Assembly: GCF_040938485.1 (NCBI RefSeq) | Contig: NW_027271466.1 | Span: 2,728,001-2,792,000 of the forward strand | Length of the DNA stretch: 64,000 nt | DNA from: Diadema antillarum | Taxonomy: Eukaryota | Direction of reading: 5' to 3' | Part shown: one piece after another, positions 23,141-47,690 of the stretch | How positions within the stretch are numbered: the first letter of the stretch is position 1 | Layout of the letters: each line of letters begins with the position of its first letter | Notes under the pieces: generated by a model | What the model was told of the DNA's origin: nothing | Seen by the model: only the letters and a program-made list of their open reading frames with translations | The model's database searches: none | Translations under genes and position numbers: made by a program

Positions 23141-23690
23141 TATACAGATGATGCACAGGATAGAGTGCGTTAGTGGAGATGTAGCGCACTCGAGGGTATT
23201 TACAATTGTGAAACATGCACGAGACGAAGCCGAGTGCATGTTGCACTACATTGTAAATACCCGAGAGTGAGCTGCATCTCCACTAACGCCACGAAATAAT
23301 CCTGTGCATCATTTGTTTTATAAAATGGGTCGAAAACTAACAGCATTTTTCACGTACCTTTGTAAGATGTCCGAAGATGTTCGTCCCAAACATTTACGCA
23401 TGTCGCACTCGGAAATCCCGCACATATAAGTACTGTACGTATAAGAGTATACGTACGCCACACATGTCATGCACACAAGAAAGGCCGGCCGGCAGCCCGA
23501 ACTAGAAGTTGTTTACAGGATTGACAGCGCGTATAGTAGCGCGCGACGCACTTGTAACAACTGATAGAGTGCGCACTGCTAGTGTAAACATTTGTGACGT
23601 CAGGCCGCGGATGTTAGTGAGAAATTAATGTACGCACACGTGACTCATTTCAGCGCTTCCAATTGGCTACATTCTTGAACCCATTTTATA
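23141..23690 (-). mobile_element. Asymmetric non-autonomous element: long hairpin plus subterminal inverted repeats
   Basis: Hairpin 23141-23316 (TATACAGATGATGCACAGG...CCTGTGCATCATTTGT); inverted repeats TATAAAATGGGT (23319) / ACCCATTTTATA (ends 23690). Confidence 0.6.
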
Positions 23691-25293
23691 AAAGCAATTA
23701 TCGATCACAATCACAAAAACTTTACCCCAAAAATACAAGCTCCCAAGGATAGTACTTATCGAAGAAATTTCAGGAAAGCAGAGTACTGACAAGCTTCTTT
23801 TAAAAAATATTTGTAATATGGTGGAGAAGTGAACACTTGATATTAGTCATGCATTTGCAATCAGTATCTCTTGTTCTTTTACTATGCAAGCATAAATTTG
23901 TGTGAGCACTCACATAAATATCTGTGTGGGACTGTGAAACTGGAATCGTGAATTTGTCTGTAACAAGGCCTTCATAGATCCTTTGTATTTAATGGTATAT
24001 TATTCAAACAAAACAAACAGAGACAAACTTATTTTATTCTTTTCTTTGAATACAACATTAAAAGTCTATCATGATTTTGTGTTAGAGATCAATCAAACTG
24101 AAGACTTCTCCCCAACTACATTTTTCTTTCTTTTTACTGGGCTTAGCTCTCAGAAATATGCACATTGCAAAGTTGCTGGCTATCCAAACAAAAACAAATA
24201 AGCAAACAATCTTATATCCTAAAACACCATAGTTTCTGCATTCATTATATACAAATACAAGGTCAAGGCAGGTACATGTAGTACATCATGGGAAAAGTAC
24301 TGGTGAATCCTTATAGTGCATGACTACACTCGGTTCACACGTTTAACTTAACACACAGAGTTTCTGGCAAACTCCCTTCTCACTACCATGAGTTTCCAGT
24401 AAAATGCATTTCCATCTTTTTTAATGCCTCCGCCACAAAGTGATGACAGTGGCATTATTCTTTAATTTTGTTGACTTCATCAGACAACTATGTCAAAATT
24501 AACTGCTTTTCTGCATGGTGCTGTCTGATTGAGCAAAACGTTGAGCACATCATCAAAAAAATGCATTCATATCAGTGTAGCACCAAACTGAAAATGATCA
24601 CACATCTACTGTACTTAAAAGTAAATAAGGAAGAACACAGGATTCCCAAAAGAAAATCAAAAGGAAACAACCCCCTTCCCACCACCCCCTCAAAAAAAAC
24701 CCCACAAACTCTTACCCCAGTCATTTGTTGACATTACTGTCAAAAGAAAAGTAGGTTTTCTTGTACTTGCAGAAAAAATAAAGAAGAATTGACTTTATGA
24801 TCACAACTTTAAGATACTAGAGTACTACAATCCAGTAACACAAATGCCCAATTACTTCACACACTCCAAATGATTTCACAGTGTATCAAATACAATCTTA
24901 TGAAAATTGCACCTGAAGTATACTTTTTTGGGGGGATATAAATTTGTTCCTTTTGTAGTAAGAGACTTCAACTGCAAAATGCTTTGGATGGTCTTGAAGT
25001 GAGGCAGGGTCATAGCAGCATTGACAAGATACTCTTTGATTTGTGGTTACCATGTGGACCAAACACAAAAGTGTTTGATCCACCAGACAACTGGAAGACT
25101 TCCTTAGCACCATGGAAAAATACTAGAGAAATTGGTATCGGAAAATGTGACGATCATGCACGTCACAACAATCTGGAAATTAAGTGCCTGATGAAAGTGA
25201 TAAATTTCTTGCAATCATTGTATCATTTCTTCTGCCATCACCAACGGAACATGTAAATCACTTGTGAACAGGATCATAAGAAAAAAAAAAACT

Positions 25294-25307
25294 GTTGCCA
25301 TGGAAAC
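25294..25307. promoter_or_regulatory. Isolated RFX X-box-like motif GTTGCCATGGAAAC
   Basis: Near-consensus palindromic X-box. Motif only. Confidence 0.3.
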
Positions 25308-25417
25308 TGTAAATACATTCAACTATGATGATTCGTACCTCTTCATCAGGCACACACCAGTAGGAGTGCATGTGTCACGTTACGTTTGCTGCGTTGTGAC
25401 ACAGCTGACCATTCTTT

Positions 25418-26390
25418 GGCTGCGTTTATCAACTCCTTTTCTCGGCAGAAACAGGTTATCCAAACAGCTTTCCAGGAATTTTTACGAGTTGACAAACGCA
25501 AAGCTGTTTTGAAAGCCCTTTAGGAAAGCCTTTTACGAAAGGGTGCGTTTATCAACTCTCCTTTCTCGGCAGAAACAGGTTATCCAAACAGCTTTCCAGG
25601 AATTTTCAAGAGTTGATAAACGCAAAGCAGTTTTGAAAGCCCTTTAGGAAAGCCTTTTCGAAAGCCCAAAATTTGTGACGATCCAAACAGGTTTCCTAAA
25701 CAGGTTATCAGAAACCTGTTTGTAAAAGCCTTTCGAAGTTGATAAACGCAAAGCTGTTTTGAAAGCCCTTTAGGTCGCCCTACTGCGGTTACGCAACCAT
25801 GCGTTTCCGGTTTCTGAAAAGACGCGCGCCACGTAAAGTGCACACGAGTACGTGTACACAGGTGTATACAGCTGTGTGTAATGCACGCACATGCTTGGAA
25901 CAAGGAGGTGTTTCTTTCACCAACAAGGTTTGAGAAATAGAGTAACAAAGCAGTCTCATTCCCTTTGATCCCATGTCTCATGCCGCCACTCAGAAATATT
26001 TGAAGTATGTGCTAAACTGGAGCTGCCTCACAGATAGGCCAGACAATTGATTCATGTGGCATTGTATCATGACTCGTCACTCTCAAAGGAAGATAATTAT
26101 GTCTTTATGATGGTAATTGCTTTTCGCCGTCCCTTCTTAGAAAACAAGCGGCACATTAATAGTACAGGCAGTCAGGGCTTTAGGGCTCTCGAAAAGGCTA
26201 TGGAAAAGGGCTTTCGAAAGGGCTATCGAAAGGGCTATCGAAAGCCGTTTAAACAGGGGAAAGTTGATAAACGCAGCCGACAAAAACAAGCGGCACATTA
26301 ATAGTACAGGGGAGTGGACAGGGCTTTCGAAAGGGCTATCGAAAGGGCTTTCGAAAGTAGTTTAAACAGGGGAAGTTGATAAACACAGCC
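25418..26390. mobile_element. Non-autonomous TIR element (possibly PIF/Harbinger-like) with tandemly duplicated termini
   Basis: TIRs GGCTGCGTTTATCAACT / AGTTGATAAACACAGCC; left end duplicated (~125 bp), right end duplicated (~112 bp); internal AGGGCTWTCGAA repeats; no TSD found. Confidence 0.7.
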
Positions 26391-26474
26391 ATAGATAAAC
26401 AGAATAACACAAGTTACAAAGGTCTGCAAAGACAAATAGTGTGTTGGCTCTGTTGATGTTTTTTGAAGGGAGTC

Positions 26475-29400
26475 TCAGGTTGAATTCTGATTGGCCAGTT
26501 TTCTGCGCTTTGATCTTGGCCTTCCTGCACTGTTCTCTCCCTGGACCATCTCTCTAGGGATGTACCTGTCAACTGCTGACTCTGTTTTCTCGAGAATGGC
26601 AAGGACGCTGGTCAAGATCTTCTCGTCCTCCACCAGGGCGACTTTGCCGTGGAGGCGCTCGAGGACAGCATGGCACTTCTTTGGAAGACTGTCCTGTAGA
26701 GGCTCAGCCGCCCCGTTGTCATTTCCATCCCTCCCGATGAGGAGGGATGGCTTCAATGGCGTCGTCTGCTCAATTTCTCGAGCTGCAATGTCCAGATGTG
26801 CTTCTGCATGCTGAAGATCACCGTTGGGATCTTCGCTCCCAGTCCGGGCAATAATTGGCTGCTTGCCCACGATCTTGTGGACGAAGTCGTAGTCTATGCT
26901 AAAGTACGGTGACTCCGTGTATGACGTCGGCAGGTCTGACCAGGACCAGGAGTCCACGTGGACAAGGATGGCCAGGATGTGCTTGCAGGGCAGGGCCGTC
27001 CGGTCCCAGGTCTTGCAGCTGCAGTCCGGCCGCATCAGGTTGACGGTCAGGGGGTCCGGCGTGGCGGACCTTGATGTCGGCTGCACGTGGAAGATGCCGC
27101 AGCTGGCGTCGAGGAGCTTGACGTGTTCTACCCTGACGCTCCTGGTGGCCTTCCACTGCTGCAGGCAAGCCTGGAGGAAGGGGCGGGGCCGCTTGTGCAA
27201 GAAGGTGGGGACGGTGCTGCTGTACTTCCGGCAGCCATCGTCCGCTTTGGAGTTGGACTGGAAGTATCTGCAAAGAAGGTTTCATGATCTCATTATTCTT
27301 GTCACAGTTCTCCTCAACTCTTGTGGATATGACTACTAGGGGATGTGATAGCCTTATAGTGTATGAGTACACAGTAAACTGTACAGCTTTAACCAGGATA
27401 GTAAAATGTAATGCACAGCACGTTCTTCATAAGTCATATCAATAATTTTTTATTCTTCTTCTTCTTCTTCAGTATGTCATTCTTCAAGGAAACCCTGGTG
27501 AGGTAAAAATGTGTGTCAAACCTAAATGTATGTATCAAAGAGACCTGGGCTCTGTTTTACGAAGAGTTATGATTTATCATACAGTCGATTTCTATCATAA
27601 GTCTATGGCAGCTCGTGTGGTAAGGAAATTCATAATCGCTTATATCTTGATAAAACGGGGTCCTGTACGACTAGATGAATCGATCAATTACCTACTATTT
27701 CAACTACACGCTTTGTTTGTATGAAGGCTACAATGTCTTACAGATTGTTTGTAAGTATTTCATATCAAAATCATATTAATAATCCTGATGCTGGAGACAA
27801 ACAAGTGAGTTAAATCAAAGAAACAAAGAAAAGAAACAAACATACACAAAAATAGCAGGCAAATCACATACAACAAACAAAAATTCCATAAAAAATTGGT
27901 TATTGGTCTTACGCGGATTTGTTCTTGGGTAGGAATCTGTGGAGGATGTGGGAGATAAGCTGGGTTAGTTTTGGTTGCTTGTCGGATGAGAGGCAGGTGG
28001 TGCGGAAGAGTTTGTTCTGGAGGCCGACGCCCGCACTGGTGTTGACTGCCTTGATGAAGCTTTGCTTCCTAAAGGCACGTACCCATCGCTACAACAAAAT
28101 GCATCAAATCTATTAGAAACTAATTTATCATATTTGTCAAGTGAACACTGTTGCATATACCAAAACACAATGACATGATTTAGTGGTTATTTTCAACAAA
28201 GAATACTATTTGAAATACATCCTGTAGATGGTTTATTGTTCAAGTATTGCAAGAAGTCTGTGAGCCCATTCTCTCAGCCTTACAATGTTTGTAGCTTGTC
28301 AAGCTATTTTATTTTACTGCCATTCTACTCAATTGTCTGAAACTTAAAAATACTTGGCTGCAAAGCAAGTTGTATAAGCCCTCTCAGACGTGCCAATACA
28401 ACAGTCTCATTTAAAGGTGACTGCAATAAATAAAATGCAAAACAAAACTGAAATACGCATAAATTGGGTTCAGAATCATTTTGCTTGAAATGACTGCTAG
28501 CTTCAGAATAGATCAGAGAAAGGAAAGAAAGAAGAAAATGATGAAGAAGCAGGTGAAGAAAAAGAATGACAAGAAAATGATGACAAAGAATAGGAAGTAG
28601 AAGATATACAAAGAAGATGAAGAATACATAAAAACACACTTGTAGAAGAAAAAGAGGGAGGAGAAAAGGAAAAAAAAAAGAAGGGAAGAAGATAAAGTAC
28701 CAGAGCAAGGAAGAAAGAAAGAAAAAAAGAAAGAAAGAAAGAGAGAAAGAAAAAAAAGAAAGAATGAAAGAAAGAAAACATATAAGAAAGAGGAACAGAG
28801 GAAATCACGTTGGCATCCCGGGTAAGATTAACCCATTGAGGACGGGCTGATTTTGCTAGAACATACATTTCCCATAGACACCTGCCCGAGTATACTCGGG
28901 ACTCATCCTAAATGGGTTAAAGGTCCCACTCACTTGGTGGGTAGGGAGCCAGAGACGCCCCAGCCACTCTCTCAGCCCTGCATTCTCACTCCATGCGGGG
29001 CTAGCTTGGAGGTGGATCACAGCCGCATAGTACTCCCCCTCTGTGCCGGAGCCCGCCACCCGCTCCAGGAGGGGAAGCACGCTCTGGCGGAGGCTCCGAT
29101 GACCGTTAGACTCGGAGCCCAGCCAATGGTCCCAGGCATACTGCCGGTGGTAGTCGCAGAAGTAGACAGAGTAACCTTGGCATCAATAAGAAATGATGGT
29201 ACCAGTGGAATTCAAGAAACAATCATCATAGTTGATTAGAAAGATCAAGACAACCATTCACTCTATAGATTCTCTAAGCCATGATATCTCAAAAACCACT
29301 GTAACACTTCTTTGGCTTGGTACTGTATTTACTCTTTATTATGATTTTTATTCATCATTATTATTTTCTTTTTTACTTTTTTCAAGGTACATTTGTAGAG

Positions 29401-32400
29401 TGAAGAAAAATGATATTTCACCTTTTGTTATTGTAATATAAAATTGCTTGCTTTGGTGGAAGAAAATTGGCAACACATTTTAGAAGATTAAAATTTCTGT
29501 TTCTCTTTAAATTGGCAACTTTGTGTAATCTTTTTACTGATTTTGTGCTGATTTAGTGAATCTAACCAGTTTTTATTACCTCTTCTTCCTCTATACCTCT
29601 TTCAGTCCAAACAGCAGCATGTTTATAGAACGTATGTAATGCTAACAGCATTTTAAGATAGTGATCGTGTGAGGGTCAATGACACTCCATAACAAACCTG
29701 GGAAGCTCTGCTGGACTGCGTTCACATCGTCAATGGCGGCATCAGTCACAAAGTTGGCCGGCAGCCATGAGGGATTCCACTCCTTGAGGACAGACAGGGC
29801 TTCAACAATCTGGCCCTGCTGCGCCTCCTCGACAACGAACGTAGCCACCACCTGGTAGTCGCAGTTGGTCTTCACCAGAATGAGGTAGACGGGTAAACTG
29901 CACCTGGGATAGACAATGAATGACCACATCTTTTGTACAGGCTCTGGACAATGGTTTGAGGTGTGAGGGATACCAACAAATTCTCAATTAATTCGCATGA
30001 GGCATTAGAGATGAATAAGTCGTAGTCCTGATTAGCAAATATTTCCATCTTAGTCCCGTATCACCTTTTACTGTAAAAGTGGATATTTTCGTGTGTGTAA
30101 TTTTTCACGCTCAGCTGGGTAAGATCGGTTTCGTTTTTAATTCTGCGGAGTCAAGACATGTGCTACTGCAGCATAAAACAAGCATAAATATTTGAATGCT
30201 CTTATTTTCATGCTAGTTTCTGATTGCGTGAAGTGTGGGAAAAATTTCAACACCGCGAAAATTCCACTTTTACAGTAAGCAACAACAATGTTTGATATAA
30301 TCTCATAACATATGACACATATATGTTGTGTCCATAACTTTAATGCATATATACACGTATTATGTGGTAGCTCCTAATTTTTCAAGGATTATCTGTATCA
30401 AACTTGAATGACAAACACTAGTTCCCACAACACTACAGTGTTTCATTTGATCTATCGATCATTCCCAAGGCATTATTAAAGGTCAAGTTCAGAGGCACAC
30501 CACTAAATAAAAATATAAAAAAACTCTAGTCTCACCATCACACCAAATAGGTCATTGCAGCTGACAAGATATGCTGTGATGCTTAACCCTAACACATTAA
30601 GTAAAGACAATACTACACTGCATACTTACACATGCTTCTCCAAAACTGTGGGATTACTTGGCTCTACAGATATAAAATTCAAATTACCACAATAAACAGT
30701 TTCTACAAATGAAATTTAGAAGCCAAAGTTTTCAAAAAGATGTTCATAGTTTTGGGATATCCTGAGCAACATGGAGGTCTTGCAGTGCTGTAAGATATAT
30801 TTGTGAAGTTTTTCACTTTGGAAATTTGTGTGTAATAATTTTTAGTTTATTATGAATACTGGCATTCTCCATGCAGCTGAAACGAAGCATTCTTATTTGG
30901 GGGCTTTTCATGTAAACAAAGACAAATTATTCTTACCCTGTGGTCCTATACACAGGATCAAGCACACATAACTCATTGCCATATCTTGCCAGCAGGTATT
31001 GCTGCCACGCAGTCTGATGGACCAGAAGCATGTTGTCCCCAGTTGGTGTCACCATCGGCACTGGTTGCTGCACCTGCAAATGTTGTTGCTGCTGCTGCTG
31101 GGGCTCCAGTGGCCTTGGAGGTTGTGACTGGACCTGAACAACTGCCTGCGTTGGATCTGGCAGAGGGAGTGGTTGCTGTGGAAGACTTTGCTGCGATGGA
31201 AGCTGAAGAGTTTCTGAGTGTTGCCCCAGTTGTTGCTGAGTCTGTTGCTGAGATGCTGCTGGTGGTGGTGGTGGTGGGGGTTGTAGTGGTTGCAGTGGTG
31301 GTGCTGGTAGTTGCTGTGATGATGCATTGATGAGATGCTGGTGAAAGACCTGCATCTGCTGCAGGTGCTCGAGAGGAAGTTGCTGCAACATTTGCTGATG
31401 TTGCTGGTGGTGATTGGATTGCGGCAGTTGCTGGGACTGTGCTAGATGCTTGGCTTCTAGCTGCTGGGCATGTTGCTGGCTTCCATCCTGGGACAGCATG
31501 TGTTGTTGGTGTTGCACAAGTTGTTGGGTTGCCTGGTATTGCTGAAGTACTTGTTGCTGCAAGGAATGCTCCTGTTGTTGAGTATGTGGCACAGGTTGTA
31601 ACTGCTGTTCACTATTGAACTGCTTCTGATTCCCTAAATTTCCCTCAGACCTGTGGGTCTGCAAAAACAGATTTTGCAGAACTTGTGTAGTAGTGAGGAG
31701 ACAAATATCTCTGCAACAGCGCTTTTTCATTGACTGCAATATATTCAACCTTTTTTAGACGCATCCAACAATTTTGTTCTTGACGCAAGAGCAAGCCTAC
31801 TGTACATCTCAGCTGCACAAAGGATTTTGACAATGTGGGTGTAAAAAAAAAAGAAAAAAGAGAGAAATCAACACTCCCATGGGGCCATATCAGAGGAGCA
31901 CCCACATGAAAGTATGCTGGGGGATAGAACACTTTCCCACTTGCAATCCATCACAACTTGTTGTTGTTGTTGTTTTCATACACACAAGACCCACTGATAA
32001 AGTGATCTGCATTGTATCACTAACCTCTACATCATCACATCTTAAATTAGTCATTTGGGCACCACAACAGCTATGCCACGCTCTTGATCAAATTATAGCT
32101 TGGTTTAGAAATGAAATATTCTCTAGTTAATCAAATTCTGTCTCTAGAAACCTTTCCAGAGAATTCTATTTTTTTTTTCATTATCATTCTTTTTTTTTCA
32201 TTGTGACATTAAATCATATGTCATAGCATTTTTACTTCAAGCTAATATTTCAGCATCCATTGCGACTATAAAAATCTTGTATTATGCTTCAAACAGGGGT
32301 ATGCCTTTTCCCTTGATTTCTTGAACTAACACTTTTGACTACGCAATGCTGCCATTTACACAATACAGGGACTTCAATAAACCAAAATATTCTACCTTTT

Positions 32401-35400
32401 TACCACCTTTGCGATAGAAGAAGAGTTGTGCAGGATCGTCCTTCTGCCACTCTGATATCTTGACCTCCAGATTTGACTGATTTGTCTTGCTGAGTTTCTT
32501 CTTGGCCTCTGCAGAATACATGTGATATCTGGGATGATATTGGTGGCAAGTGGTAGTGATGGTAGTGATGAGGGTGGTGGTGGTGGCAGGCATGGTCATG
32601 GTAGAATTGGTAGTGGTGGTGACAGAGGTGGTTGCAGTGCAATTGGTGATGGTTGTGATGTGGTAGTGGTAGTGATGTTGGTGGTGATGATGATGGTGGT
32701 GGTGTTGGTGCAATTGGTAGTGGTAGTGATGTTGGTGGTAATGTTGGTGGTGGTGTTGGTAATGTTGGTGATGGTGCAGTTGGTGATGGTGTTGATGGCA
32801 GGCATGGTGATAATAGTGATGGCAGTGTTGATGGTGTTGGTAGTGGTAGGGATGGTAGAGTAGGGATGGCAGTGTTGACAGTTGTGGTAGTGATGGTGAG
32901 GTTGTTGTGGTGATGGTGTGTGTGGTGATGGTGGTAGTAGGGATGGCAGTGGTGATGGCAGTAGTGATGGTGGTTGGTGTGAGGATGGAGATTATGGTGG
33001 TGATAGTCGTTGGAGGAGGAACAGAATCCAAGGAAGAATGTCTCAATATGCAAGATCTTGGCTTCATGTACATGTATCTACAACAACAAATGTGATACAT
33101 AGTCTTTCTGTTCCTAACCCCACAACATTTTGGGCTCAAACACTGGTACAATGGAATGAAAAAAAAAAAATCTATATATCGATCCAGGTCATTAACATCA
33201 CGCTGTAACAACATCACCCTTTTCATCATTTGTTTTAATATGAAACAGATAGGAAAGCACTGATGCTAATGGTACCATGCCACAAATGCACAGAGGGAGG
33301 TGAATCCTATCATCAATAGGCGCAACTGCAATCATCACTTTTATCAGAGCAAGGTTATCACCACCTCTGTATGTGTTGGCACTCACATTATAGTGGAAAT
33401 CGCACAAGGAAATTCAGAGTTATATCAATCCTCTCCAATTAAGAAAATAAATTAAATGAAAGAAATGAACAAAATTTCCTTACCTGATGTCGCTGTCTTC
33501 CGGGAAATACCGCCTGTTGCTAAGGTCTGGGCCGGGCTTGCCCCAGAAGAGGGCACCCGAGACGAACCTCTCTATGTGTAGCCTCATCTCACCCACACTT
33601 GTCACCCCGGCACCTACCATACGCTGGATGTACTCAATGATGCGGTGGTCAACGCGCTGACGAGCCCCGCAGATCTATGGTGGGAATGTGACTGTTTGAG
33701 TTATTCAGATCATGGTCTTGGTCAGAATATATAAAGGATCACTGTTGGCTGGCTGTAACCGAAGTATTGCCACAGTTGTTAAAATTCAGATAATTTGAAA
33801 ATTGGTCGCAAATGCTTTCTAATACAGAAAATAGACTTTAATTTTGTTTTAAAAAAACAGAAAAAAAACCCACATCATTACAGGGTATATAACGTTAGGC
33901 AGTTAAGACACAATAGAACTGGTTTTCCCACTGCAATCGCAATGTGTATGAAACACACATTTCCAGACAGAGTCGCTTCATCATTTCTATTTTCTTTTTG
34001 TATCTTCTTTCTGTGTTTCTCTCTATTTTACTTCTTTGTTCTGCAGTAAACTCAAAACAGTCAAATCGCTTTCATCTCTTTTAGCGGAGGACGAATGAAT
34101 AGAAAAATTAAAGAAAATCTTTTAGTCAGTGTACAGTCCTCGGGAAAAAAATCAAACTATCAGTTGTACTCAAGGCACTGAAGTGCTAGGAAGTATAAGC
34201 CAATATCTTTCACCTTTCCCACGGGATGTCCTTCATGCTCGCATTCCTCAGGGAGGTAGATATAGATTCTTCTCTCTCCGTTTGTCTTGCCAGCTTCTAT
34301 TGCACTCCATGCTCTCTGCGCTGCCTGGCGGCGATCATAGTTTGAATTCTTTGTGATCTACACAACAGTGAAATTAAGAGAAGAATATATAAAAAATAAA
34401 TACATAAATAAAATAAAACAATATCCAGAAATGATTTCATGACAATGCCACTTAGTATGAGGAAGTGTCAAAAGATGCAAGGCAATAAATCCAAACTGAA
34501 TTGCTTGCTAAACGCTGTGAGAATGCTTTTTAGTTCAGCAATTTAAAGGTGCATGGTCCCGGTGTTTTAGTCAAATGCGTACACGGGCGCACGGCGCAAG
34601 TTTCCTATAGAGACCTACGCTATCGACTCCTATTTGGTGCTTACGCTTTGGCCCACTTTCCCCGAGTCCGAAGAAGTCCGATTCACTGTAGTCCGTGGTC
34701 CGATCACACTTCGGCTCATGATTCGGCTGAGGGGGATGACAGCTTCAGCAAACTTCTTTTGTGATGTCATAATAAGAAGCACATATGCACGCACCCTAAC
34801 ATTACTACAGACTGCGCGATGCGCAGAGGAAGACAACAAAGGCAACGTTACTTAGCAACACCTACGCACTTTACTCTTGATGACAGCTCAACTTCGGTAA
34901 TCTTCGTATCTATGCTAACGGTGATCGGCAGCATCATCAACAGCGCCCTCTACACTACCGGGACTATGCCCCTTTAAGGTAGAATCAAACTTCATACTTT
35001 TCAGCTATCTAAAGTGAACAGAGTCCACAGAAGAGATTGAATGAATCAATGCCTGGGCTCTTTCAATATTTCACACTGTAAAAATAGTAATACACCTGTA
35101 CAGGAGCGGATCTAGAAATTCTGTAAAGGGGCGCAACTAATATTTCTGGTGCCACTTCCGGGTTTCATTTCATTTTTTTTCTTTTTTTTTTAATGAAAAA
35201 TAAAGGGGGGGGGCGTGCGCCGGTTGCACCCCCCTCTGGATCTGCCACTGCCTGTATGTGAGCTGGGCATTTATGTAAAGACTTTCAGCCATGCATAGAG
35301 TAATCAAATCACGCTCTCTTCTTCCAATGGAATGAATATAATGCAATGAATATCACGAAAGTGACTAGGCCCCATCAACGACGTGGAGAAATTCTATTTT

Positions 35401-37840
35401 GAGGACGCGGGTGTACAAACCTTGAATTCTGGAAACTTCATCACTTCTTTCATGACCAGTTTGGCCTGGCAGTCTTTCTTCTTTGTGTCCTGGATAAGAT
35501 TCCTGGCGCTGTTGGAGTTACCAGTCTCTCTTTTCTGAGAAATTAGACATACATGTAGTGTTCAACAAAGGAGCAAGTAATATGTCAGGACTTCATGAAA
35601 ATGACCACAAATGTGTACTATCTGTACCGATGTGTTGGCTCAGTGAGTAGAGCGGCTGCCCTCACAATCGGGAGGTCGTGGGTTCAAACCCCGGCCGCGT
35701 CATACCAAAAGACGTTAAAAGATGGGAGTTGCTGCTACCTTGTTTGCCGTTCAACAGTTGAAAAGGTTAGAGCAACGTCGATCTGGCGCTGCTCAGTGGC
35801 TGCCGGGCCCACGATCAATTGGGCAAAATGAATTTCCATTCTTGGACAATAAAATTTGGAGTTTATATCCAAAACAATTATTATCATTATTATTGTTATC
35901 TACAATTATGATTGGCTTCTTGTTAACTATACGGTCAGTAATATAATCAGCCCCTCACAAAAGGCAAATATCTTCCATCCACTCTGCTGTGCAAACTTAC
36001 TTTTATATGACAGCAAGAACAAGTGTTGGAAATGAAGTAGAATTTCCCCTTTTCCATTAAGAGATCACAAAACTTTGCATGCATATATATGTTTATTTTT
36101 TCAAGGAACGAATGAAGTTCACCAATATTATGATTTATTCCACTTTGCATGCTTTATTGTGTAAAACAGCCTTTGAACTACGCTCACCTATAAGAAGCAG
36201 CAGCAGTCGTGTTCAGACAACTCGCATGTGCCTACATACATGTAGATCGCACAGTCTACACAGCAGAGTGAATGGAAGATAGATCTGTCTGTTGTGAGGG
36301 GCCAACCGTATATTACCGACCATACATTCAACAAGAGGCCAGATAATCATCAATCTAGAATGCTCCAAGGGAATACAAAAAGAGAGAGAGAGCGTGATGT
36401 TGTAAATGTGGTTTTGATTCCAATGACTGCAGCAATGATGCCTTGGAAAGTGCTTTTTCACCACCACATAACATAACATAACAGAACATGCTGTATGAAC
36501 AAATAACAATTACTATTCTTGTTGTCCAGTTTCCTATTAATAAAGCAAGTATAGAGTTCAAACACATTATTATTACCTAACTCACAGTGATTCAGTATCA
36601 TCTATCACTATGCCATTGAGACCTACCCGTTTCTCTGCTCTTGCTGCTTTGGCCCGCACCTTGGTCTTGAACTTGTGATCCTTGCCGTACTCGCACTCGT
36701 AGATGTTTTTGTTAAGGTGCATGAAAGGGATACCGTCATATTCTATCTTTCCACCGTGGCTCCTTTGAGCCTCCTCCCATAGAATCCTGTGCTTGCATTT
36801 ATCCACAGCTGTAAAGTATGGCACAAGAGCATAAGAGATATAGATCATAGAGATTAAGGGCACTCCCTGTATGCTTTGTTTCCCCACCCCCTCCCCATAG
36901 TTCTTCTTTAATATCTCTCATGTATGTCTTGCTTAATGAAGACATACTTCAGAGGTATATGCAGAATTATCCTGTTAAAGGTGTTAAATTCAACTCTCAA
37001 CCCCCCCACACACACACATACACACACAAACACCCCGGGTAATTTAAAAATGACCAAGCTAATTAAAAAAAAATCAGAATTAGACCTTGGCATTGCTTCC
37101 CTTCTACCCTACACTTTTACACTTCAGACCTCTACAGCTTTTGAACTGGAAAAGCTCTAGCAAGCTCTACAACTTTATTGGTCAGATTGAAATTATAACA
37201 CTGGAGTAACTTTTATGTGAAGGTGTAGATTTAGAGTTGAGCTGGAGTCGGTTTTTGCTATCTCTCTTCATTATTATTATTGCCATTATTGTTTGCTACA
37301 TTGCTACATTGGAATTGGATTTCGAAGATAATGCCTGAAAAAAAAAAAGTGTCAAAAGCATGCACACACCCACCCACACACACGTGCACACACATATCAC
37401 AACTTAAATTACATATTTTTTTCGCCTATTTTGAGACACTTAAGACGTTCCAAAATCTGAAACTAAACTGTGTAACTGTTACAACTTACTAGTACAAGGA
37501 GCGCCCCGGGGACGGGGTGAGTGCGGTCCCAGCCAGCGCGGCGACGGAGCTTTACCGCATACCGTCCCCACAAGTCTGGGGGTGAAAACTTTGAATAGTC
37601 CGCTCGATGGCTACGCCTACTGTACTTACAAATAATTATTGTCGCTGTCCACTTACCTGTCCTTCCAAAATGGGCAGAGGTCTTCAGTGACACGAATCTG
37701 AGTGTTTTCTCAAGCTCATGACTTTCTTTCACCATCTCTGCCCGAGCTTTGGTGTAAACATAGCCGAAATTGTGAGAAATTGCCACATCGAATTTTACTG
37801 TGTTCCCAACAACACTCACTTCTGTGGAAGAACCAGCCAT
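26475..37840 (-). CDS. CaRF/ALS2CR8-like DNA-binding domain + Q/P-rich insert + MULE transposase-like domain + SWIM Zn finger, ~1028 aa, probably a domesticated transposase
   Basis: Exons 37657-37840, 36627-36808, 35421-35534, 34214-34357, 33484-33674, 32396-32528, 30937-31658, 29698-29903, 28934-29175, 27913-28088, 26475-27267 = 3087 nt, all GT-AG, in phase, no stops. Motifs: YDGIPFMHLNKNIYECEYG, KKKDCQAKLVMKEVMKFPEF, LPEECEHEGH, RRYFPEDSDIRYHM (CaRF-like); LLVHQTAWQQYLLARYGNELCVLD, KTNCDYQVVATF, FVTD, CDYH (MULE core); CSCKTWDRTALPCKH (SWIM). The exon 6/7 junction has alternative donor choices. Confidence 0.88.
28500..28790. repeat. Purine-rich (GAA/AAAG) low-complexity tract, intronic
   Basis: Read directly; lies in the intron between exons 28934 and 28088. 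Confidence 0.85.
30071..30275. mobile_element. MITE with TA flanks
   Basis: TA|CTGTAAAAGTGGA...TCCACTTTTACAG|TA. Confidence 0.75.
32540..33010. repeat. Degenerate (GGT/GAT/AGT)n trinucleotide microsatellite, intronic
   Basis: Lies between the exon ending at 33484 and the exon starting at 32528; it explains the His/Thr/Val-rich ORFs in the track. Confidence 0.85.
34547..34973. mobile_element. Kolobok-like MITE in an intron of the transposase-derived gene
   Basis: TTAA flanks (34543-34546, 34974-34977); TIRs AGGTGCATGGTCCCGGT / ACCGGGACTATGCCCCT; CpG-rich interior. Confidence 0.75.
35101..35250. mobile_element. 150-bp CAG-ended MITE with 6-bp direct repeat
   Basis: CCTGTA|CAGGAGCGGATCTAGA...TCTGGATCTGCCACTG|CCTGTA. 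Confidence 0.8.
35627..35900 (+). mobile_element. tRNA-derived SINE
   Basis: A-box TGGCTCAGTGAG, B-box GGTTCAAACCC, unrelated body and a (TTA)n-like tail. Not a complete cloverleaf tRNA. Confidence 0.8.
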
Positions 37841-37933
37841 GTTTACACACAACCAACCGGGAACCTTTCTCGAAAGTGTGACAGCGCCATCTCTCGTTGA
37901 AAGAGTGCTTTCGGTGTCTTTCTTGCAATCAAA
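37841..37933. promoter_or_regulatory. 93-bp head-to-head spacer (bidirectional promoter / 5' UTRs)
   Basis: ATG at 37840 (-, AAACATGG context) and ATG at 37934 (+, AAAATGG context); CpG-enriched surroundings 37500-38200; CAGCGCCATCT motif. Confidence 0.7.
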
Positions 37934-40900
37934 ATGGCCGCGCCCATGAGATTATTTGCTTCAGCAAGACGGACCCAGTGTTTCTCACAATGTATGCGAC
38001 CATGTGCATCAAACAACACTATCATCCAGGCCAACAGTATCGGGTCAATATCCAGTCCTCTCAAAAATACTCTCCTGTCTCATGTAAACCCTGGATTTGC
38101 CATTAATTGCCGATCTGCATTCACGATATCACCCCGGCGATCTCGGAAACTGGACACGCCGAAGAGATCACGAGATTTCATCTCCACCTTGAGAAGGGAT
38201 GAGCGAGAAACTCTCTTCGAAGAACTTTTGAAGTATCACAACTACAAAGCCAGTCTCAAAAGTGGCATTGCAGCTGGGAATATTTCTTCAGGTGTGCTTT
38301 CGAATCTCCTCACTTATTTTTGTTTTATTTTCTTTTTTCATTTTCTTTTTTTTTTTTTTTTGACTGATTCACGATTGAAGCTGCCGCCATGCCGGCTGTG
38401 TAGTGACATTCCTGACAATACAGTCACTTGCATGATGTGGTGAAGTTTACTCAGTAATGGTTAGTCTAGGCCTACTTTTTTTTTTTAATGTAGGTCAATA
38501 TGGCTCTGCAGATAAGCCCCTTATATATATATTTTTTTTGTCAATCTAACGTTTGGACTTAGTAACAGTGTTCACCTCAGTGCTGTGGTGTTATTTACTT
38601 GTCTTACTTAGATCTTCATAATCACACTATCACCAAGCGTCGCGTTGTGGGACTGGACAGGTTGTAGGACCGGACGCGTATTGTAAGTGCGTCTGTAATA
38701 AAAATGACGCACCCAGGAATTTTTCAGAGTATGTTGTCTAGTATATGAGGAGTCTACATTTGTAAATTGTATATCAAGACAAGTCTATGAGGTAAAGAAG
38801 GGTGCATATATATTCCATGTAAAATAGGTAAGTTTTCACCTGTTCACAGGCGAACTTAAGACGTTAAGTGTCCGGAAACACAACCCCCCATACTACCAGG
38901 CAACAAGCCATAGCATAGGCTATGGCTATAGGTACAGTAGAGTTTTTGGAATGATTTGAACATCTTGAATAGGCCCCTATTTGAATTTGATGTTAGCTTC
39001 AAGAAATGAGAAAGAAATCATTTGTATTGCACCCCTGCTTCTTCATTTTTAATGTCCCAAGTCTGTTGACATTCACTTCTTCAAACAAGTTTTGTTCACT
39101 CTGTGAAATGTTGTTTGTGTGTTTGTTTGTTGTTGTTTTTTCAGATCTTCCACAGCAACCAGCGGCACCATTACCCACCAGTCAACAGCTGAGGTTGGGT
39201 AAGATAAATTTAAGAGTTCAAAATAAAGGTGTATGTGGCTGCTACATGTTCGTAGGTCTACTTAATAATAGTAGGTGTATTTACAGTAATCTACTAGGTA
39301 GTTGATCTTTCTCTTCTTTTTTTTTTTCTCTTTGATAATCTCATTATACATGCAATGTGGCTTCATTCAGATTGTTTTCATTTGTCATGGTATTTACTTT
39401 ATGTTATGACTGTGTCTGCATGTTGTAAATCTATCAAGCTAGGTATAGCACTATATGCCTTGATATTTAACTGTAAATCTTAAGCCATCTTTGCATTGTA
39501 CAAGTATCAAAATAGAATGCAAATCATCCTTCCAAAGAGTCATGAGAATTATTTAGTCTTAAAGACTATTGATGTCAGTTCAATAATAGTTTAACTACAG
39601 TGTAGACCGTGGTCTGTAATTGAACTGACATCAATGGTCTTTATGCATTGCCTAGTTTGAATTTTTTGTCACTTCAGATTTGACCTGCTTGTGGAGTACT
39701 GCACTTGAATAAATGTGCTCATCTCTGTGGAGTTTCATATTCTGAACTATCGCTAATGAGAACCTATTTGGTCCTCTGAACAAATTTTGCAGTCTGAATT
39801 TCACAATCTTAATAGTGAACATGTGCTTGCATGTTCTAGGTATTAAACTCATTTGACTTTATGAAAATTATTTCCCATAGATTTGATAAATGATGGCAGA
39901 TCAGGTTCCAGTGAGTATTTGGTCAATGAGTACCATGTTTTGTAATGTATGCATCTTAACAGATTCTCAAGCTATTCTTACCATTTCTCTCACTCAGTTG
40001 CCTTCAGCAATGCTCTCCCATTCATCGGGTTTGGATTCTTCGACAATGCCATCATGATAATCGCTGTAAGTCAATGCTGGCAAATACTGCCAACCTTTAG
40101 GCTATGTAAAGATTTTAGTCATGATGTTAACCCTCTCTGTGCCAGGGACAGTATGTACATGTACATTGTACAATGTCATCTAAAGGGTTGTCTGTGCCAG
40201 TCAGCACTCAAAGTACCTCAAAGGTTAAGGATACTAACGGAGGAGATGGATGGAGAAAATACGGAAAGATAGCCAAGAAGAAATGGGAAGAATACAAGTG
40301 CACACTTTGTTTCATGTTAGTGTATTGCTTTTGGCGGTTTTTCTTGTATCTGATCATTTGATAAGTTTCCCCTACATTTACAAAATATGCTCTCATATTA
40401 TCTCATTTTGGCATATTGTAAAAAGTACATAATTTGTCTTCAGTGTCTTAAATCTTATTGTTTCACTTGTTTTTGTTTCCTTTTGTAAGAAAAAAAATTA
40501 TCTAAAAATCAATTGTGCCATTATATTCAAATGAATATGGTTATCTTTGTGTTACAGGGGGATTACATCGATATGACCATAGGTGCAGCCCTCAGCATAT
40601 CCACAATGGCTGGTGAGTATGAATGCTCCAAAGAAAGGGCATTATTCTTGTCATTTTCTTTCTAACAACGTCAATAACAGGCAGTAACCTTCAGCATCAC
40701 ACTTTCCTCAATTTTCATGGACATTTCATGTATTACAAAAGTTTGGGATCATAAAATAAATTGGATATTGTATTTTTGCAGTTTTAAAGTCGAAATTTTC
40801 AGTCCTTCATTGGCTTCCTCAGATTTATGGATTCGTAGTGTGAGAAACCCTTTCAATTTTCTTCACTCTCAACTCTTACTTTTGAAAGGATGTTGGCAAT

Positions 40901-43900
40901 ACTACTTTGACTGTATTGATTATCAGTCTTGAATAGATGTACATTGTGACTGTGTACACTTTCAGTTTAGTTAGATAAATCCTCCATGTAGTGGTTGCTA
41001 TGGAGTTTTATATTCTGTTCTTTTGTTCCATTTATTGCAGAGAGCACCACTGGTTGAGATAATTCACTTGAATAGACCCTAAACTTCAAAGCCTCTTTTT
41101 CATCAGTGTGCACTTTTCCAGAGTGTGTACTTTCTTTCCTGTGTTTAAGTGGGTTAGGAGAGTCCATCTGTTTGGTTTATCATTTCAAAGCTGTAAGTTG
41201 GCTTTTTCAGAATCTGCCCTGAACTAAAATTCGAGTGGGGCAAATTTTGGGTTGTTTTGTGGTGCAGGGTCACATTTAGTCTTCAGTATCACCAGTGTGA
41301 TACACATAATAGGCAAGGAAATTGTAACATCTTCAGCATTCACATTCTTCCATGGGCAGAAGTAGCCACTTTCAGTCACAAGTACAGATAACCATGAAGT
41401 TTTTTTTTTTTTTTTTTTATAGCTCAAACACTTCTTTTTCCATCCCATTCCAATTCTTCTTCTGCATATATATTGTCAATCTTTTGGCATGTAAGCCACT
41501 CTTTTTTTTCTTCTTGCTCTGCCTTCTTTATAATGTTCTGTGTGATACACATTGTACATTTTCTCATTCCTATTTCAGCTACTTTTGTCCATATCTGCTT
41601 TTCACAATTTTTTTTTTTCAGTTCAATTATTCCCCAGTTTAATAAAAACAATGCAATGTATCATGTGTACAAAAAAAAAACATGCAAAGTAAAGTATGGT
41701 GAACGTATATATCTGTATTATAGCATCAGGCTATTAAGTTGTATGGATTATTTTAGGAATGAATGAATGAACCAATAGATCTCATTGTATGTTTGCACAA
41801 TAACAAAGACACTGATTTACAGTGTATCTATTCCATTTCTTTTCCTTCTAACTCTTTTTTTTCAATAAAAACTCCCTTCTTCTCTCTTCCATCTTTGCAT
41901 GTTCATTTTGTTTTTCTACATCTCTTTCTGCCTGACAAACTTATTCCTCACTTCCACCATCATTTCATTTTTCTTTCATTGTCACTCTCATTCCAGCTGC
42001 CGGCATGGGCAATATGATTTCAGATGTGGCTGGCATTGGGTAAGATATTGCATTCGCTCCCCCTCCCCCTAAAAAAACAAACAAACAGACAAAACAACTG
42101 ATAAACTAAGCAAGCAAACAACCGAACCCAACCCTACCCTATTTTACCCCAAATATTAGACCATCAACACTATCCCCTCCCAAAGTAGAAAGTGTATGTG
42201 TTAGTGTAGTATGATTACACTCATAGATCATAAAGCATGGCATGTTTTTAACCGCTGGTAGTTTTTGCTGTATATGTGGTTATATGGAGTGAACATCCAT
42301 TATACATTCCTGCTATATATTGCATCGTATGAAAGCATGTTATATTAGTATAACTTCATGACTAATTATAGAGGCCAATCTTTGTTTGATAGGATGTAGA
42401 ACCATAGGATGCCCTCAGTTGTAGGATGTATCAAAGTACTTGGGCTATTATTATGGCAAGATATCGCCCTTCTCTATGGGGAAAATTAGCATATCACTGT
42501 GCCTTGAAGTGTGAAAGCTTATTAAATGAGACCACCAGATGATTTGTAGACTTTTGCATTTAGACATCTATAGATTGGTTATACTTTTTACAGAGTTTTA
42601 CAATTTATAGAAATTTGGAGGGAGATTAAGAATACTTTCAAAATTCATAGCAAATCATAATGAATGAGGATGATGATGATGACATTTTATATGTGTAGCA
42701 GCGTCACATAAGAATGTATGAATCTGTGCTCAAGGAAAAACAATGAAAGAAGAAAGCATGCATGAATTCTACACAGGTGAACTTACAAAATAAAGTGGTA
42801 TTGCACAATGGAATGACATTGCAACAACACTGGAATATATGAGCCTCCTATGTCATCATTCTAGTTCAGTGTATAATGTTTTAGGTTTTTCAGAGTATTG
42901 GTTTATCTGCTCAGGGACCCCAGTAAATTCCACAAATCTATACTTGGCACTATCAATTTTTGTACTGCTTGATACAAAATGATATAATATGGCTAGAATG
43001 CCCCTTAAAAATGTTTTCACCCTCTGTGATATCTAACCACAGGCTAGCTGGCACTGTTGAAGCTGCGGTGTCCAGAGTTGGGCCCCAAGTGCCAGAACTG
43101 ACCCCCGAGCAGCTGGACATGAACAGGACGAGATGGACGGCCAGCATAGTCAGTATCAAACCTGGATATTGTAGAATGTTGTCAAATGTGATATCTGTCC
43201 TTTTAAAGTGCAACAAGCTTTTCACATTTTTCAGGAATATGGAACATGCTGTACGCAACAAAATAATAAAGACAATGTTTTCTTTGCCTGTAGAAGTGTC
43301 TGTTTTTCTAGAAAGACATCCATATAGACGCAGATGACCTTTGGTGTGATAAGGTCAACTTCAGCACTTACCTGTCATAGTGGTGTATGAACTTTGCCAC
43401 AGTGACATGCTCAGTAGGCAAATTGTGAGCTTGTAATGAGCCAAGAAAACCACAGTTTGATGTGACAAACATCTTGTGGTAGCTAGCAGTTTTAAAATGT
43501 CGTTAGTAAATAAACTGTCCATAATGAATGATATAAAGAACCAAATGAAATTCAACTTTAAACACTGACAACACCATACACAGACTAATTGAGTTCTGTA
43601 ATACCAGCAATATTTACATGCATCTGATTTGGCAAATTTCGTGAGAGCCAAGATTTGCGTAATTAAAATACACATGAAAGTTCTTGTCTACACTATGTTT
43701 ATTGAATGCCAGTGGCAATTCGTGAAAATTCCATGCCACGAACATACCTTGCTTTACAGTACCAGTATGTAGGGGCCTAATGATGTAAAGTCTTCTATAT
43801 GGAATGATTTGCAAGCTTTATAAATACCAAGAAAGTAATGGAAGATTCCCACCAACCCGATTATGGGGGCATCCCCTTTGACAAAGCTCTTATACCGCAT

Positions 43901-47680: not shown

Positions 47681-47690
47681 TGGAGTTTAA

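What the first reader, a model, noticed from the sequence alone, without database searches (positions are those of the whole stretch)
26475..37840. Intact 11-exon CaRF-like/MULE/SWIM gene: a probable domesticated transposase bridging Mutator elements and CaRF transcription factors
Eleven exons splice in phase into ~1028 aa with no stop, even though the introns are littered with MITEs, a SINE and microsatellites, which points to purifying selection. The N-terminal ~300 aa resemble the DNA-binding region of vertebrate CaRF/ALS2CR8 (YDGIPF...ECxYG, KKxxCxAK, HxGH, FPxxxDI). It is followed by a full MULE core and a SWIM finger, which vertebrate CaRF lacks as I recall it. No TIRs or TSD are visible. 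It may be a host transcription or chromatin regulator caught between transposase and CaRF-type factor (inference).
Basis: partly seen in the sequence, partly recalled or inferred. Interest (0 to 1): 0.88.

Follow-up and report, generated by a model that had tools for sequence, protein, structure and literature searches.

The report
Sea-urchin gene tamed from Mutator transposase
This is a real, intact 11-exon sea-urchin (Diadema) gene descended from a Mutator-type jumping-gene enzyme that has lost a catalytic residue, sits at the same place in a second species and is kept by selection, so it most likely now works as a DNA-binding regulator; its DNA-binding part is the same domain as in the vertebrate factor CaRF.

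Summary
On the minus strand, 11 GT-AG exons (37840 to 26475) splice into a 1028-aa ORF. It carries a CaRF-type (Pfam ALS2CR8) N-terminal domain, a Gln-rich insert, a MULE RNaseH-like core and a SWIM finger.

The window comes from a Diadema sea urchin. In D. setosum the same gene is annotated as a 1025-aa product and lies head-to-head with TMEM65. Every splice site I could compare is conserved and the indels are in frame. dN/dS is 0.14 overall and 0.04 in the DNA-binding domain. The third DDE residue is Gly (E to G728), and no TIRs flank the gene. I therefore read it as a domesticated transposase.

The "bridge" reading needs correcting:
- ALS2CR8+MULE+SWIM is the normal architecture of a widespread metazoan MULE family. 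Most members keep the DDE triad, and one member is multicopy in a frog.
- The introns are ancestral to that family, so they are not a mark of domestication.
- Vertebrate CARF matches only the N-terminal domain.
- A second, probably independent, domesticated paralogue exists in sea urchins (P0020/P0171).

The scan also noted a similar gene elsewhere in this genome (s1-220787).

Verdict: a new member of a known kind, of moderate interest.

The parts
37657..37840 (-). Exon 1, start codon at 37840-37838, aa 1-61. It forms the first strand-helix-strand of the N-terminal DNA-binding module.
   Evidence: The donor cagGTAAGT is conserved in D. setosum.
36627..36808 (-). Exon 2, aa 62-122. ALS2CR8 part 1, with YDGIPF and YECEYG. 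Cys100 is a putative zinc ligand.
   Evidence: Pfam ALS2CR8 at 4.1e-10, profile positions 4-54..
35421..35534 (-). Exon 3, aa 123-160. ALS2CR8 part 2, with TKKKDCQAK (Cys144).
   Evidence: Pfam ALS2CR8 at 3.7e-07, profile positions 49-90. The acceptor was chosen with help from homologue alignments.
34214..34357 (-). Exon 4, aa 161-208. ALS2CR8 part 3, with EHEGHP (His201, His204).
   Evidence: Pfam ALS2CR8 at 6.8e-06, profile positions 90-143. The intron after it is at the same position and phase in four relatives.
33484..33674 (-). Exon 5, aa 209-271. ALS2CR8 part 4: a helical region ending in RRYFPEDSDIR.
   Evidence: Pfam ALS2CR8 at 2.4e-10, profile positions 164-225.
32396..32528 (-). Exon 6, aa 272-316. 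Linker conserved across the family (..W....F.YR).
   Evidence: Alignments. Splice sites are conserved in D. setosum.
30937..31658 (-). Exon 7, aa 317-556. It holds a lineage-specific Gln/Pro/Leu/His-rich insert of about 204 aa (33% Gln), then the start of the MULE core including the first catalytic Asp (D550, 30959-30957).
   Evidence: The insert is absent from all 13 relatives aligned. It is present in D. setosum with only in-frame indels and dN/dS 0.27.
29698..29903 (-). Exon 8, aa 557-625. RNaseH-like core with the second catalytic Asp (D611, 29743-29741).
   Evidence: Pfam ZSWIM1-3_RNaseH-like at 1e-05..
28934..29175 (-). Exon 9, aa 626-706. The CxxH motif is kept (C632, H635), followed by a helical insertion domain.
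27913..28088 (-). Exon 10, aa 707-764. This is the position of the third catalytic residue. The window has Gly728 (28025-28023) where the family has Glu (window NTSAGVGLQN; family TNNGxERQN).
   Evidence: Glu is present in 14 of the 17 relatives that cover this column..
26475..27267 (-). Exon 11, aa 765-1028 plus the stop codon. It contains the SWIM finger (C847, C849, C859, H861), a conserved C-terminal helix and a basic NLS-like RPRSKRRK (26522-26499).
   Evidence: Pfam SWIM at 1.1e-08.. The helix and NLS are conserved in the distant orthologue L006.
37841..37933 (.). A 93-bp spacer between the two divergent start codons. I read it as a bidirectional core promoter shared with TMEM65.
   Evidence: It is about 95% identical to D. 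setosum apart from one 10-bp indel, against 77-86% in introns. CpG observed/expected is about 1.0, against 0.14-0.39 nearby.
37934..38290 (+). First coding exon of the divergent neighbour TMEM65 (approximate 3' end).
   Evidence: 98% identical to D. setosum TMEM65-like P0176. A TMEM65 Pfam hit lies further downstream at 39949-40269.

Best explanation
This is a host gene of a Diadema sea urchin that descends from the transposase of a metazoan Mutator-like (MULE) element. It keeps that transposase's full layout: an N-terminal zinc-containing DNA-binding module of the CaRF/ALS2CR8 type, an RNaseH-like core and a SWIM finger. It has lost the third residue of the DDE catalytic triad (Glu to Gly728), so it should no longer cut and paste DNA. 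It has also gained a Gln-rich segment of about 200 aa between the DNA-binding module and the dead core. The following steps are inferred, not shown. The protein enters the nucleus through its C-terminal basic motif. It binds specific DNA sites through the ALS2CR8 module, which is the most strongly constrained part. It self-associates or recruits partners through the inactive transposase core and SWIM finger, as the plant MULE-derived factors FHY3/FAR1 do. It activates transcription through the Gln-rich segment. It is transcribed from a short, conserved, CpG-rich bidirectional promoter shared with TMEM65.
For: An 11-exon, 1028-aa ORF with all introns GT-AG. Domains found by Pfam. A syntenic orthologue in D. 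setosum, head-to-head with TMEM65 and annotated with a 1025-aa product carrying ALS2CR8, ZSWIM1-3_RNaseH-like and SWIM. All compared splice sites are conserved and the indels are in frame. dN/dS is 0.138 over 589 codons: 0.037 in the ALS2CR8 part, 0.27 in the Gln-rich part and 0.15 at the MULE start. dS of 0.18 is in line with intron divergence, and Fisher's test gives p = 4e-20. D550, D611 and CxxH are kept, but the family's Glu is Gly, with no acidic residue nearby. No flanking TIRs. A distant orthologue of the last exon (L006) has saturated synonymous sites (pS 0.83) yet is 70% identical in protein over 130 codons; it keeps the same intron acceptor, the C-terminal helix and the NLS. In the tree the window, D. 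setosum, P0151/P0001 and P0002 form a fully supported clade on a long stem. A model of a full-length relative aligns end to end with FRS/FHY3/FAR1 and ZSWIM3. The 93-bp spacer is conserved and CpG-rich.
Against: There are no expression data, no DNA-binding data and no genome-wide copy count for this gene. The D. setosum comparison covers only exons 1-7 and part of exon 8, so I do not know whether E to G is shared by the orthologues. Two of the three catalytic residues and the CxxH motif survive, so some residual nucleic-acid chemistry cannot be excluded. Gln-rich tracts are also simply low-complexity sequence, and this one's dN/dS (0.27) is the weakest constraint in the protein. The structural inferences rest on a model of a scallop relative, not of this protein.
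Confidence: 0.85

Rival explanations
1. It is the transposase gene of a still-mobile, or only recently immobilised, giant intron-bearing MULE element, like the roughly 22-kb multicopy units in the frog Phyllobates. On this view it merely happens to lie next to TMEM65.
For: Relatives with the same architecture and shared introns behave as mobile elements. An identical 993-aa protein is encoded at 10 or more places in Phyllobates, each gene spanning about 21.68 kb. 308 clusters match at E < 1e-10. Introns are ancestral to the family. D550, D611 and CxxH are kept.
Against: The locus is orthologous in two species, with dN/dS 0.14 and no disabling mutation over 589 codons. The catalytic Glu is lost. 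There are no TIRs. The start codon lies 93 bp from TMEM65 across a conserved CpG-rich spacer. The lineage sits on a long private stem with distant orthologues.
Confidence: 0.04
2. It is a domesticated transposase, but it acts as a repressor or chromatin factor rather than an activator. For example, it might bind the termini or MITE relics of related MULE elements to silence them or to organise chromatin, or it might work as a SWIM-type adaptor in a ubiquitin-ligase or DNA-repair complex.
For: The evidence for domestication is the same. Transposase DNA-binding domains natively recognise element ends. Other notes on this genome report Mutator-like MITEs and Pack-MULE-like elements (unchecked). 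The dead core and SWIM finger are constrained and conserved in L006.
Against: Nothing excludes it. The Gln-rich insert (33% Gln) is a feature more typical of activation domains. No repressor or ligase-associated domain was detected.
Confidence: 0.3
3. It is the echinoderm orthologue of vertebrate CARF. On this view it preserves the ancestral full-length state, and vertebrate CARF later lost the MULE and SWIM parts.
For: It has the ALS2CR8 domain. Vertebrate CARF is the best Swiss-Prot structural match of the N-terminal module (E about 1e-13, 20-23% identity).
Against: In the tree the window's clade nests among transposon-like members from scallop and other animals on its own long stem. A second urchin lineage (P0020/P0171) sits elsewhere; the AU test of the two urchin lineages as one clade gives p = 0.022. 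This pattern fits repeated independent captures from a mobile family. CARF sequences could not be placed in the tree, and no synteny with CARF was tested.
Confidence: 0.07

Closest known systems
FHY3 / FAR1 / FRS proteins of plants (MULE-derived transcription factors)
   Same: The three-part layout is the same: an N-terminal zinc DNA-binding module, a MULE transposase core and a SWIM finger. A model of a full-length relative aligns over residues 3-719 with FRS11, FRS10, FRS5, FHY3 and FAR1. In both cases a domesticated transposase is retained as a single host gene.
   Different: The domestication is independent, in animals. The DNA-binding module is of the ALS2CR8/CaRF type; its match to FRS N-termini is weak (E about 1e-2). 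The window's protein has a Gln-rich insert between the DNA-binding module and the core. Its function is untested.
Vertebrate ZSWIM1 / ZSWIM3 / ZSWIM9 (MULE-derived host genes)
   Same: Exon 8 matches Pfam ZSWIM1-3_RNaseH-like. ZSWIM3 aligns structurally over almost the whole model of the relative. Both have a SWIM finger.
   Different: Pfam detects ALS2CR8, not the ZSWIM3 N-terminal family, in the window's protein. The lineage and domestication event are different.
Vertebrate CARF (calcium-responsive transcription factor, ALS2CR8)
   Same: They share the ALS2CR8 domain by Pfam. CARF is the top structural match of the N-terminal module.
   Different: CARF matches only residues 2-290 of the relative's model (human CARF 221-522). 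It has no MULE core or SWIM finger. Orthology was not shown.
The metazoan ALS2CR8-MULE-SWIM(-PHD) transposon family (e.g. Pecten XP_033729820, Branchiostoma KAI8506623, Phyllobates XP_073524300)
   Same: The domain order is the same, with 30-40% identity across all conserved exons. Five intron positions are identical.
   Different: Those members keep the D, D, E triad. Many carry a C-terminal PHD finger, and one fragment carries a Ulp1 protease domain. One member is multicopy. The window's gene has lost the Glu, lacks PHD and Ulp1, carries a Gln-rich insert, and sits at a fixed, selected locus.
Sea-urchin paralogue P0020 (Diadema, XP_071498505) / P0171 (Lytechinus pictus LOC129264676)
   Same: It is also an intron-rich ALS2CR8 + RNaseH-like gene that has lost the catalytic Glu (to Arg or Lys). 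It is conserved between urchin orders at 52% identity.
   Different: It lies at a different locus, with sulfotransferase and Kelch neighbours. It has also lost CxxH. It sits in a different clade, and the AU test disfavours a common origin (p = 0.022).

Membership tests
Active Mutator/MULE (MuDR) DDE transposase | Homology of the RNaseH-like catalytic core to MULE transposases | tested here: met
   ZSWIM1-3_RNaseH-like on exon 8. Colinear alignment with relatives that hit Pfam MULE PF10551.
Active Mutator/MULE (MuDR) DDE transposase | Complete D, D, E catalytic triad (with the CxxH motif between D2 and E) | tested here: not met
   D550, D611, C632 and H635 are present. The Glu column holds Gly728, whereas 14 of the 17 relatives covering that column have Glu.
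Active Mutator/MULE (MuDR) DDE transposase | Terminal inverted repeats and a 8-11 bp target-site duplication around the gene | tested here: not met
   No flanking inverted repeat in 22000-42000 other than low-complexity matches.
Active Mutator/MULE (MuDR) DDE transposase | Multiple near-identical copies in the genome | not testable with these tools
   The window holds one copy. The whole genome could not be searched. The scan notes one other similar gene in this genome, probably the P0020 paralogue.
Domesticated (exapted) transposase host gene | Orthologue at the syntenic position in another species | tested here: met
   In D. setosum OZ188195.1 a 1025-aa gene lies head-to-head with TMEM65, and the flanks are colinear.
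Domesticated (exapted) transposase host gene | Purifying selection between orthologues | tested here: met
   dN/dS is 0.138 over 589 codons, p = 4e-20. The distant orthologue L006 has saturated dS and dN 0.19.
Domesticated (exapted) transposase host gene | Expression as a host transcript | not testable with these tools
   The only indirect evidence is that NCBI's gene model in D. setosum has the same structure.
CaRF / ALS2CR8 family | Pfam PF15299 domain above the gathering score | tested here: met
   Exon pieces score 40.4, 30.7 and 41.2 bits against a cutoff of 28.9, with a fourth piece at 26.6. The matches are colinear over profile positions 4-225.
CaRF / ALS2CR8 family | Orthology and shared architecture with vertebrate CARF | tested here: not met
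   CARF aligns only with the N-terminal 290 residues of the family model and lacks the core and SWIM finger. The window's clade nests among transposon-like members. CARF sequences themselves could not be put in the tree.
SWIM zinc finger | CxCx(n)CxH ligand pattern and a Pfam hit | tested here: met
   C847, C849, C859 and H861. PF04434 scores 34.8 bits against a cutoff of 19.6.
FHY3/FAR1-like transposase-derived transcription factor | DNA-binding module + inactive transposase core + SWIM finger in one polypeptide | tested here: met
FHY3/FAR1-like transposase-derived transcription factor | Sequence-specific DNA binding and transcriptional activation | not testable with these tools
   Inferred only, from the strongest constraint falling on the DNA-binding module (dN/dS 0.037) and the Gln-rich insert.

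The most novel reading that the evidence does not exclude
The DNA-binding domain of the vertebrate neuronal factor CARF is the native N-terminal DNA-binding module of one metazoan Mutator-like transposon family. That family has been tamed repeatedly: once as CARF (DNA-binding module only) and at least twice in sea urchins as full-length, catalytically dead proteins. The window's gene would be the first of these with a Gln-rich activation segment, and a tractable model in sea-urchin embryos for what a CaRF-type domain does when still attached to its transposase core. I found no paper linking ALS2CR8/CaRF to Mutator elements in the searchable library.
Probability: 0.55. Interest if true: 0.65.

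Novelty: new member of a known kind. Interest (0 to 1): 0.5.

Why it matters
Domesticated transposases are a recurrent source of transcription factors, and this is a clean, well-supported animal example. It sits at a fixed locus and is under selection. One catalytic residue is gone, and an activation-like insert has been added.

The wider point is not specific to this window. The CaRF/ALS2CR8 domain has been treated as an orphan vertebrate DNA-binding domain. Here it turns out to be the standard DNA-binding module of a widespread animal MULE family that is probably still mobile in some species. That gives CARF a probable transposon origin. It also offers sea-urchin genes in which the function of that module can be tested by knock-down and CUT&RUN in embryos.

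Tried and rejected
1. Finding the window's own full-length protein or annotated orthologues by word-indexed search failed. Queries were P0020 and then an alignment of P0020 plus the window's exons. Only the paralogue lineage and fish relatives came back.

2. The contigs of the nearest fragments, P0001 and P0151 (ENA ERZ26222911), could not be read because no DNA was served. Only the ORF layout was visible, with an ALS2CR8 ORF about 9 kb upstream of a SWIM ORF. The frog copies had the same problem, so their TIRs could not be checked.

3. I considered P0020 (Diadema) as the orthologue and rejected it. It has different neighbours and lies in a different clade.

4. I considered introns as evidence of domestication and rejected that, because the introns are shared with scallop and amphioxus relatives.

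5. A 52-nt inverted repeat flanks the amphioxus copy (L005 9906-9957 / 27397-27448). It has no matching target-site duplication, so I left it as a lead.

6. No solved structure matches the family by sequence. None matches the N-terminal model by fold.

7. Rfam found no RNA or SINE-like family in the introns.

8. A look-up of the scan's notes by sequence with P0020 was blank, which is uninformative. The organisms behind SRR16156417 and ERZ26222911 could not be identified from papers.

Full report
**1. The observation**

Stop-to-stop ORFs on the minus strand between 26.4 and 37.9 kb, together with the phases of candidate GT/AG sites, give one consistent model. It has 11 exons:
- 37840-37657
- 36808-36627
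- 35534-35421
- 34357-34214
- 33674-33484
- 32528-32396
- 31658-30937
- 29903-29698
- 29175-28934
- 28088-27913
- 27267-26475

The CDS is 3087 nt, giving 1028 aa with a single terminal stop. Where several acceptors were possible (introns 2, 3 and 6), the choice was guided by Pfam and homologue alignments.

Pfam run on individual exons finds three domains:
- ALS2CR8 colinearly on exons 2-5, covering profile positions 4-225.
- ZSWIM1-3_RNaseH-like on exon 8.
- SWIM on exon 11.

No inverted repeat brackets the gene. The introns do hold microsatellites and small hairpin repeats. A SINE was not confirmed.

**2. Where the window comes from, and the orthologue**

The divergent neighbour's first exon is 98% identical to 'TMEM65-like [Diadema setosum]'. 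In D. setosum chromosome OZ188195.1, TMEM65 lies head-to-head with an annotated gene. Its 1025-aa product carries ALS2CR8, ZSWIM1-3_RNaseH-like and SWIM.

The window is colinear with that locus. Aligned blocks over the gene's introns run at about 77-89% identity, and the exons (with 30-nt flanks) at 91-97%. The window is therefore another Diadema-like species, not D. setosum itself.

The fetched DNA covers exons 1-7 and part of exon 8. Over that stretch:
- Every donor and acceptor is conserved.
- The only indels are in frame (6 and 3 nt). 1028 minus 3 gives 1025 aa, matching NCBI's product and independently validating the model.
- Nei-Gojobori dN/dS is 0.138 over 589 codons, with dS 0.18 and dN 0.025.
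- By region, dN/dS is 0.037 in the ALS2CR8 part, 0.27 in the Gln-rich part and 0.15 at the start of the MULE core.
- The excess of synonymous change has Fisher p = 4e-20.
- D. setosum keeps D550 and the putative zinc ligands.

A Logan contig (L006, SRR16156417, genomic) carries a far more distant orthologue of the last exon. It has the same intron-10 acceptor. Over the first 130 codons it is 70% identical in protein, while synonymous sites are saturated (pS 0.83, dN 0.19). It also keeps the C-terminal helix and a basic RxKRRKL motif.

**3. Catalytic status**

I aligned the window's protein with 21 relatives. It keeps the first Asp (D550, in VLDPVY), the second Asp (D611, in FVTDA) and the CxxH motif (C632, H635). 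At the third position it has Gly728 (NTSAGVGLQN), where 14 of the 17 relatives that cover the column have Glu (consensus TNNGxERQN). No acidic residue lies nearby. Assigning these columns to the DDE triad follows the established MULE motif pattern: DxTY, then xTD, then CxxH, then NxxES/ER. The SWIM ligands are intact.

**4. The family it belongs to**

A full HMMER scan with the last exon finds 1147 clusters at E < 1e-3 and 308 at E < 1e-10. The full-length relatives come from Pecten, Branchiostoma, teleosts, dendrobatid frogs and sea urchins. They show the same ALS2CR8 + MULE/RNaseH-like + SWIM order, often with a C-terminal PHD finger; one C-terminal fragment carries a Ulp1-protease domain after SWIM.

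In Phyllobates terribilis an identical 993-aa protein is encoded at 10 or more places, each gene spanning about 21.68 kb. That is the signature of a recently mobile, very large element.

I mapped the exon structures of the Diadema paralogue, the scallop gene and the amphioxus gene. Five intron positions, with their phases, are identical in all four genes, and a sixth is shared by three. The intron-rich structure is therefore ancestral to the family. It is not evidence of domestication. That evidence comes from section 2 and section 3.

**5. Two urchin lineages**

P0020 (Diadema) and P0171 (Lytechinus pictus, 52% identical) form a second intron-rich lineage at a different locus, with sulfotransferase and Kelch neighbours conserved between two Diadema species. 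This lineage has also lost the Glu (to Arg or Lys), and the CxxH motif as well.

In a maximum-likelihood tree the window, D. setosum, P0151/P0001 and P0002 form a fully supported clade on a long stem, inside a group that contains the scallop gene. P0020/P0171 sit with the frog, fish and amphioxus members. Forcing the two urchin lineages together costs 32 log-likelihood units (AU p = 0.022). The grouping was chosen after seeing the tree, and long branches are involved. Two independent domestications are therefore likely but not proven.

The scan's own notes list a second 'CaRF-like + MULE + SWIM' host gene elsewhere in this genome (s1-220787). It is probably this paralogue, but I could not check that.

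**6. Relation to CARF and other known proteins**

I made an AlphaFold model of the scallop relative (residues 1-720, pLDDT 79). It aligns end to end with plant FRS/FHY3/FAR1, vertebrate ZSWIM3 and ZSWIM9, and K. lactis alpha3. Its core aligns with IS256-type transposases. Vertebrate CARF aligns only with residues 2-290 (human CARF 221-522).

A model of the N-terminal 290 residues alone has CARF as its best match (E about 1e-13, 20-23% identity). The N-termini of FRS proteins follow at E about 1e-2. No solved structure matches.

That module occupies the same position as the FAR1-type module of other MULE-derived proteins. This favours the direction transposon to CARF, but a domain phylogeny including CARF is still needed.

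I found no paper linking ALS2CR8/CaRF with Mutator elements.

**7. Likely mechanism**

Shown by the data:
- A fixed, selected, catalytically incomplete transposase-derived gene.
- Its strongest constraint falls on the DNA-binding module.
- It has a lineage-specific insert of about 204 aa with 33% Gln.
- It has a conserved C-terminal basic motif.
- A 93-bp CpG-rich spacer to TMEM65 is more conserved than the introns.

Inferred from those facts:
- The protein is nuclear and binds specific DNA sequences.
- It activates transcription through the Gln-rich segment.
- It uses the dead core and SWIM finger for self-association or partner binding, by analogy with FHY3/FAR1.

A repressor or chromatin role, for example at MULE-derived repeats, is a live alternative.

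**8. Verdict**

The 'intermediate between transposase and CaRF' reading should be replaced by 'one of several independent offshoots of a CaRF-domain-bearing MULE family'. The orthologue is already annotated in D. setosum, but only as an uncharacterised protein. This is a new member of a known kind and of moderate interest. It carries a broader and apparently undescribed implication for the origin of CARF.

Noticed in passing
window 8802-10847 (- strand): Two exons of a tektin gene. Pfam Tektin scores 9.2e-34 and 1.6e-24. This is an ordinary neighbour further downstream of the finding's gene.
   Followed up: partly
window 25421-26357: Just past the gene's stop codon there is a 124-bp duplicated unit. 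It is followed by 12-bp tandem repeats (AGGGCTATCGAA / AGGGCTTTCGAA) that also pair as inverted copies.
   Followed up: no
window 46610-47690: A long tandem array with open frames on both strands (repeating VTSSITTGDLFPPP-like units). It is present in D. setosum too, where blastn gives many staggered matches. Pfam finds no family.
   Followed up: partly
L001 10001-20779 and L002 10001-25112 (Diadema antillarum / D. setosum): A second intron-rich ALS2CR8 + RNaseH-like gene (P0020/P0153; orthologue P0171 in Lytechinus pictus). It has lost both the catalytic Glu and the CxxH motif and has conserved neighbours. It looks like an older, separate domestication.
   Followed up: partly
Phyllobates terribilis GCA_046119375.1 (no DNA served): An identical 993-aa ALS2CR8-MULE-SWIM-PHD protein is encoded at 10 or more places, each gene spanning about 21.68 kb. 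This is a candidate for a recently active giant MULE in a vertebrate.
   Followed up: no
L005 9906-9957 and 27397-27448 (Branchiostoma belcheri): A 52-nt inverted repeat, 90% complementary, starting TGGATCC, brackets the amphioxus family member and defines a 17.5-kb unit. I saw no matching target-site duplication.
   Followed up: partly
window 32600-33080 (intron 5): A (TGG/TGA)n-type microsatellite block that is open in all three minus-strand frames. It mimics a His/Thr/Pro-rich coding exon but is intronic in the model.
   Followed up: yes
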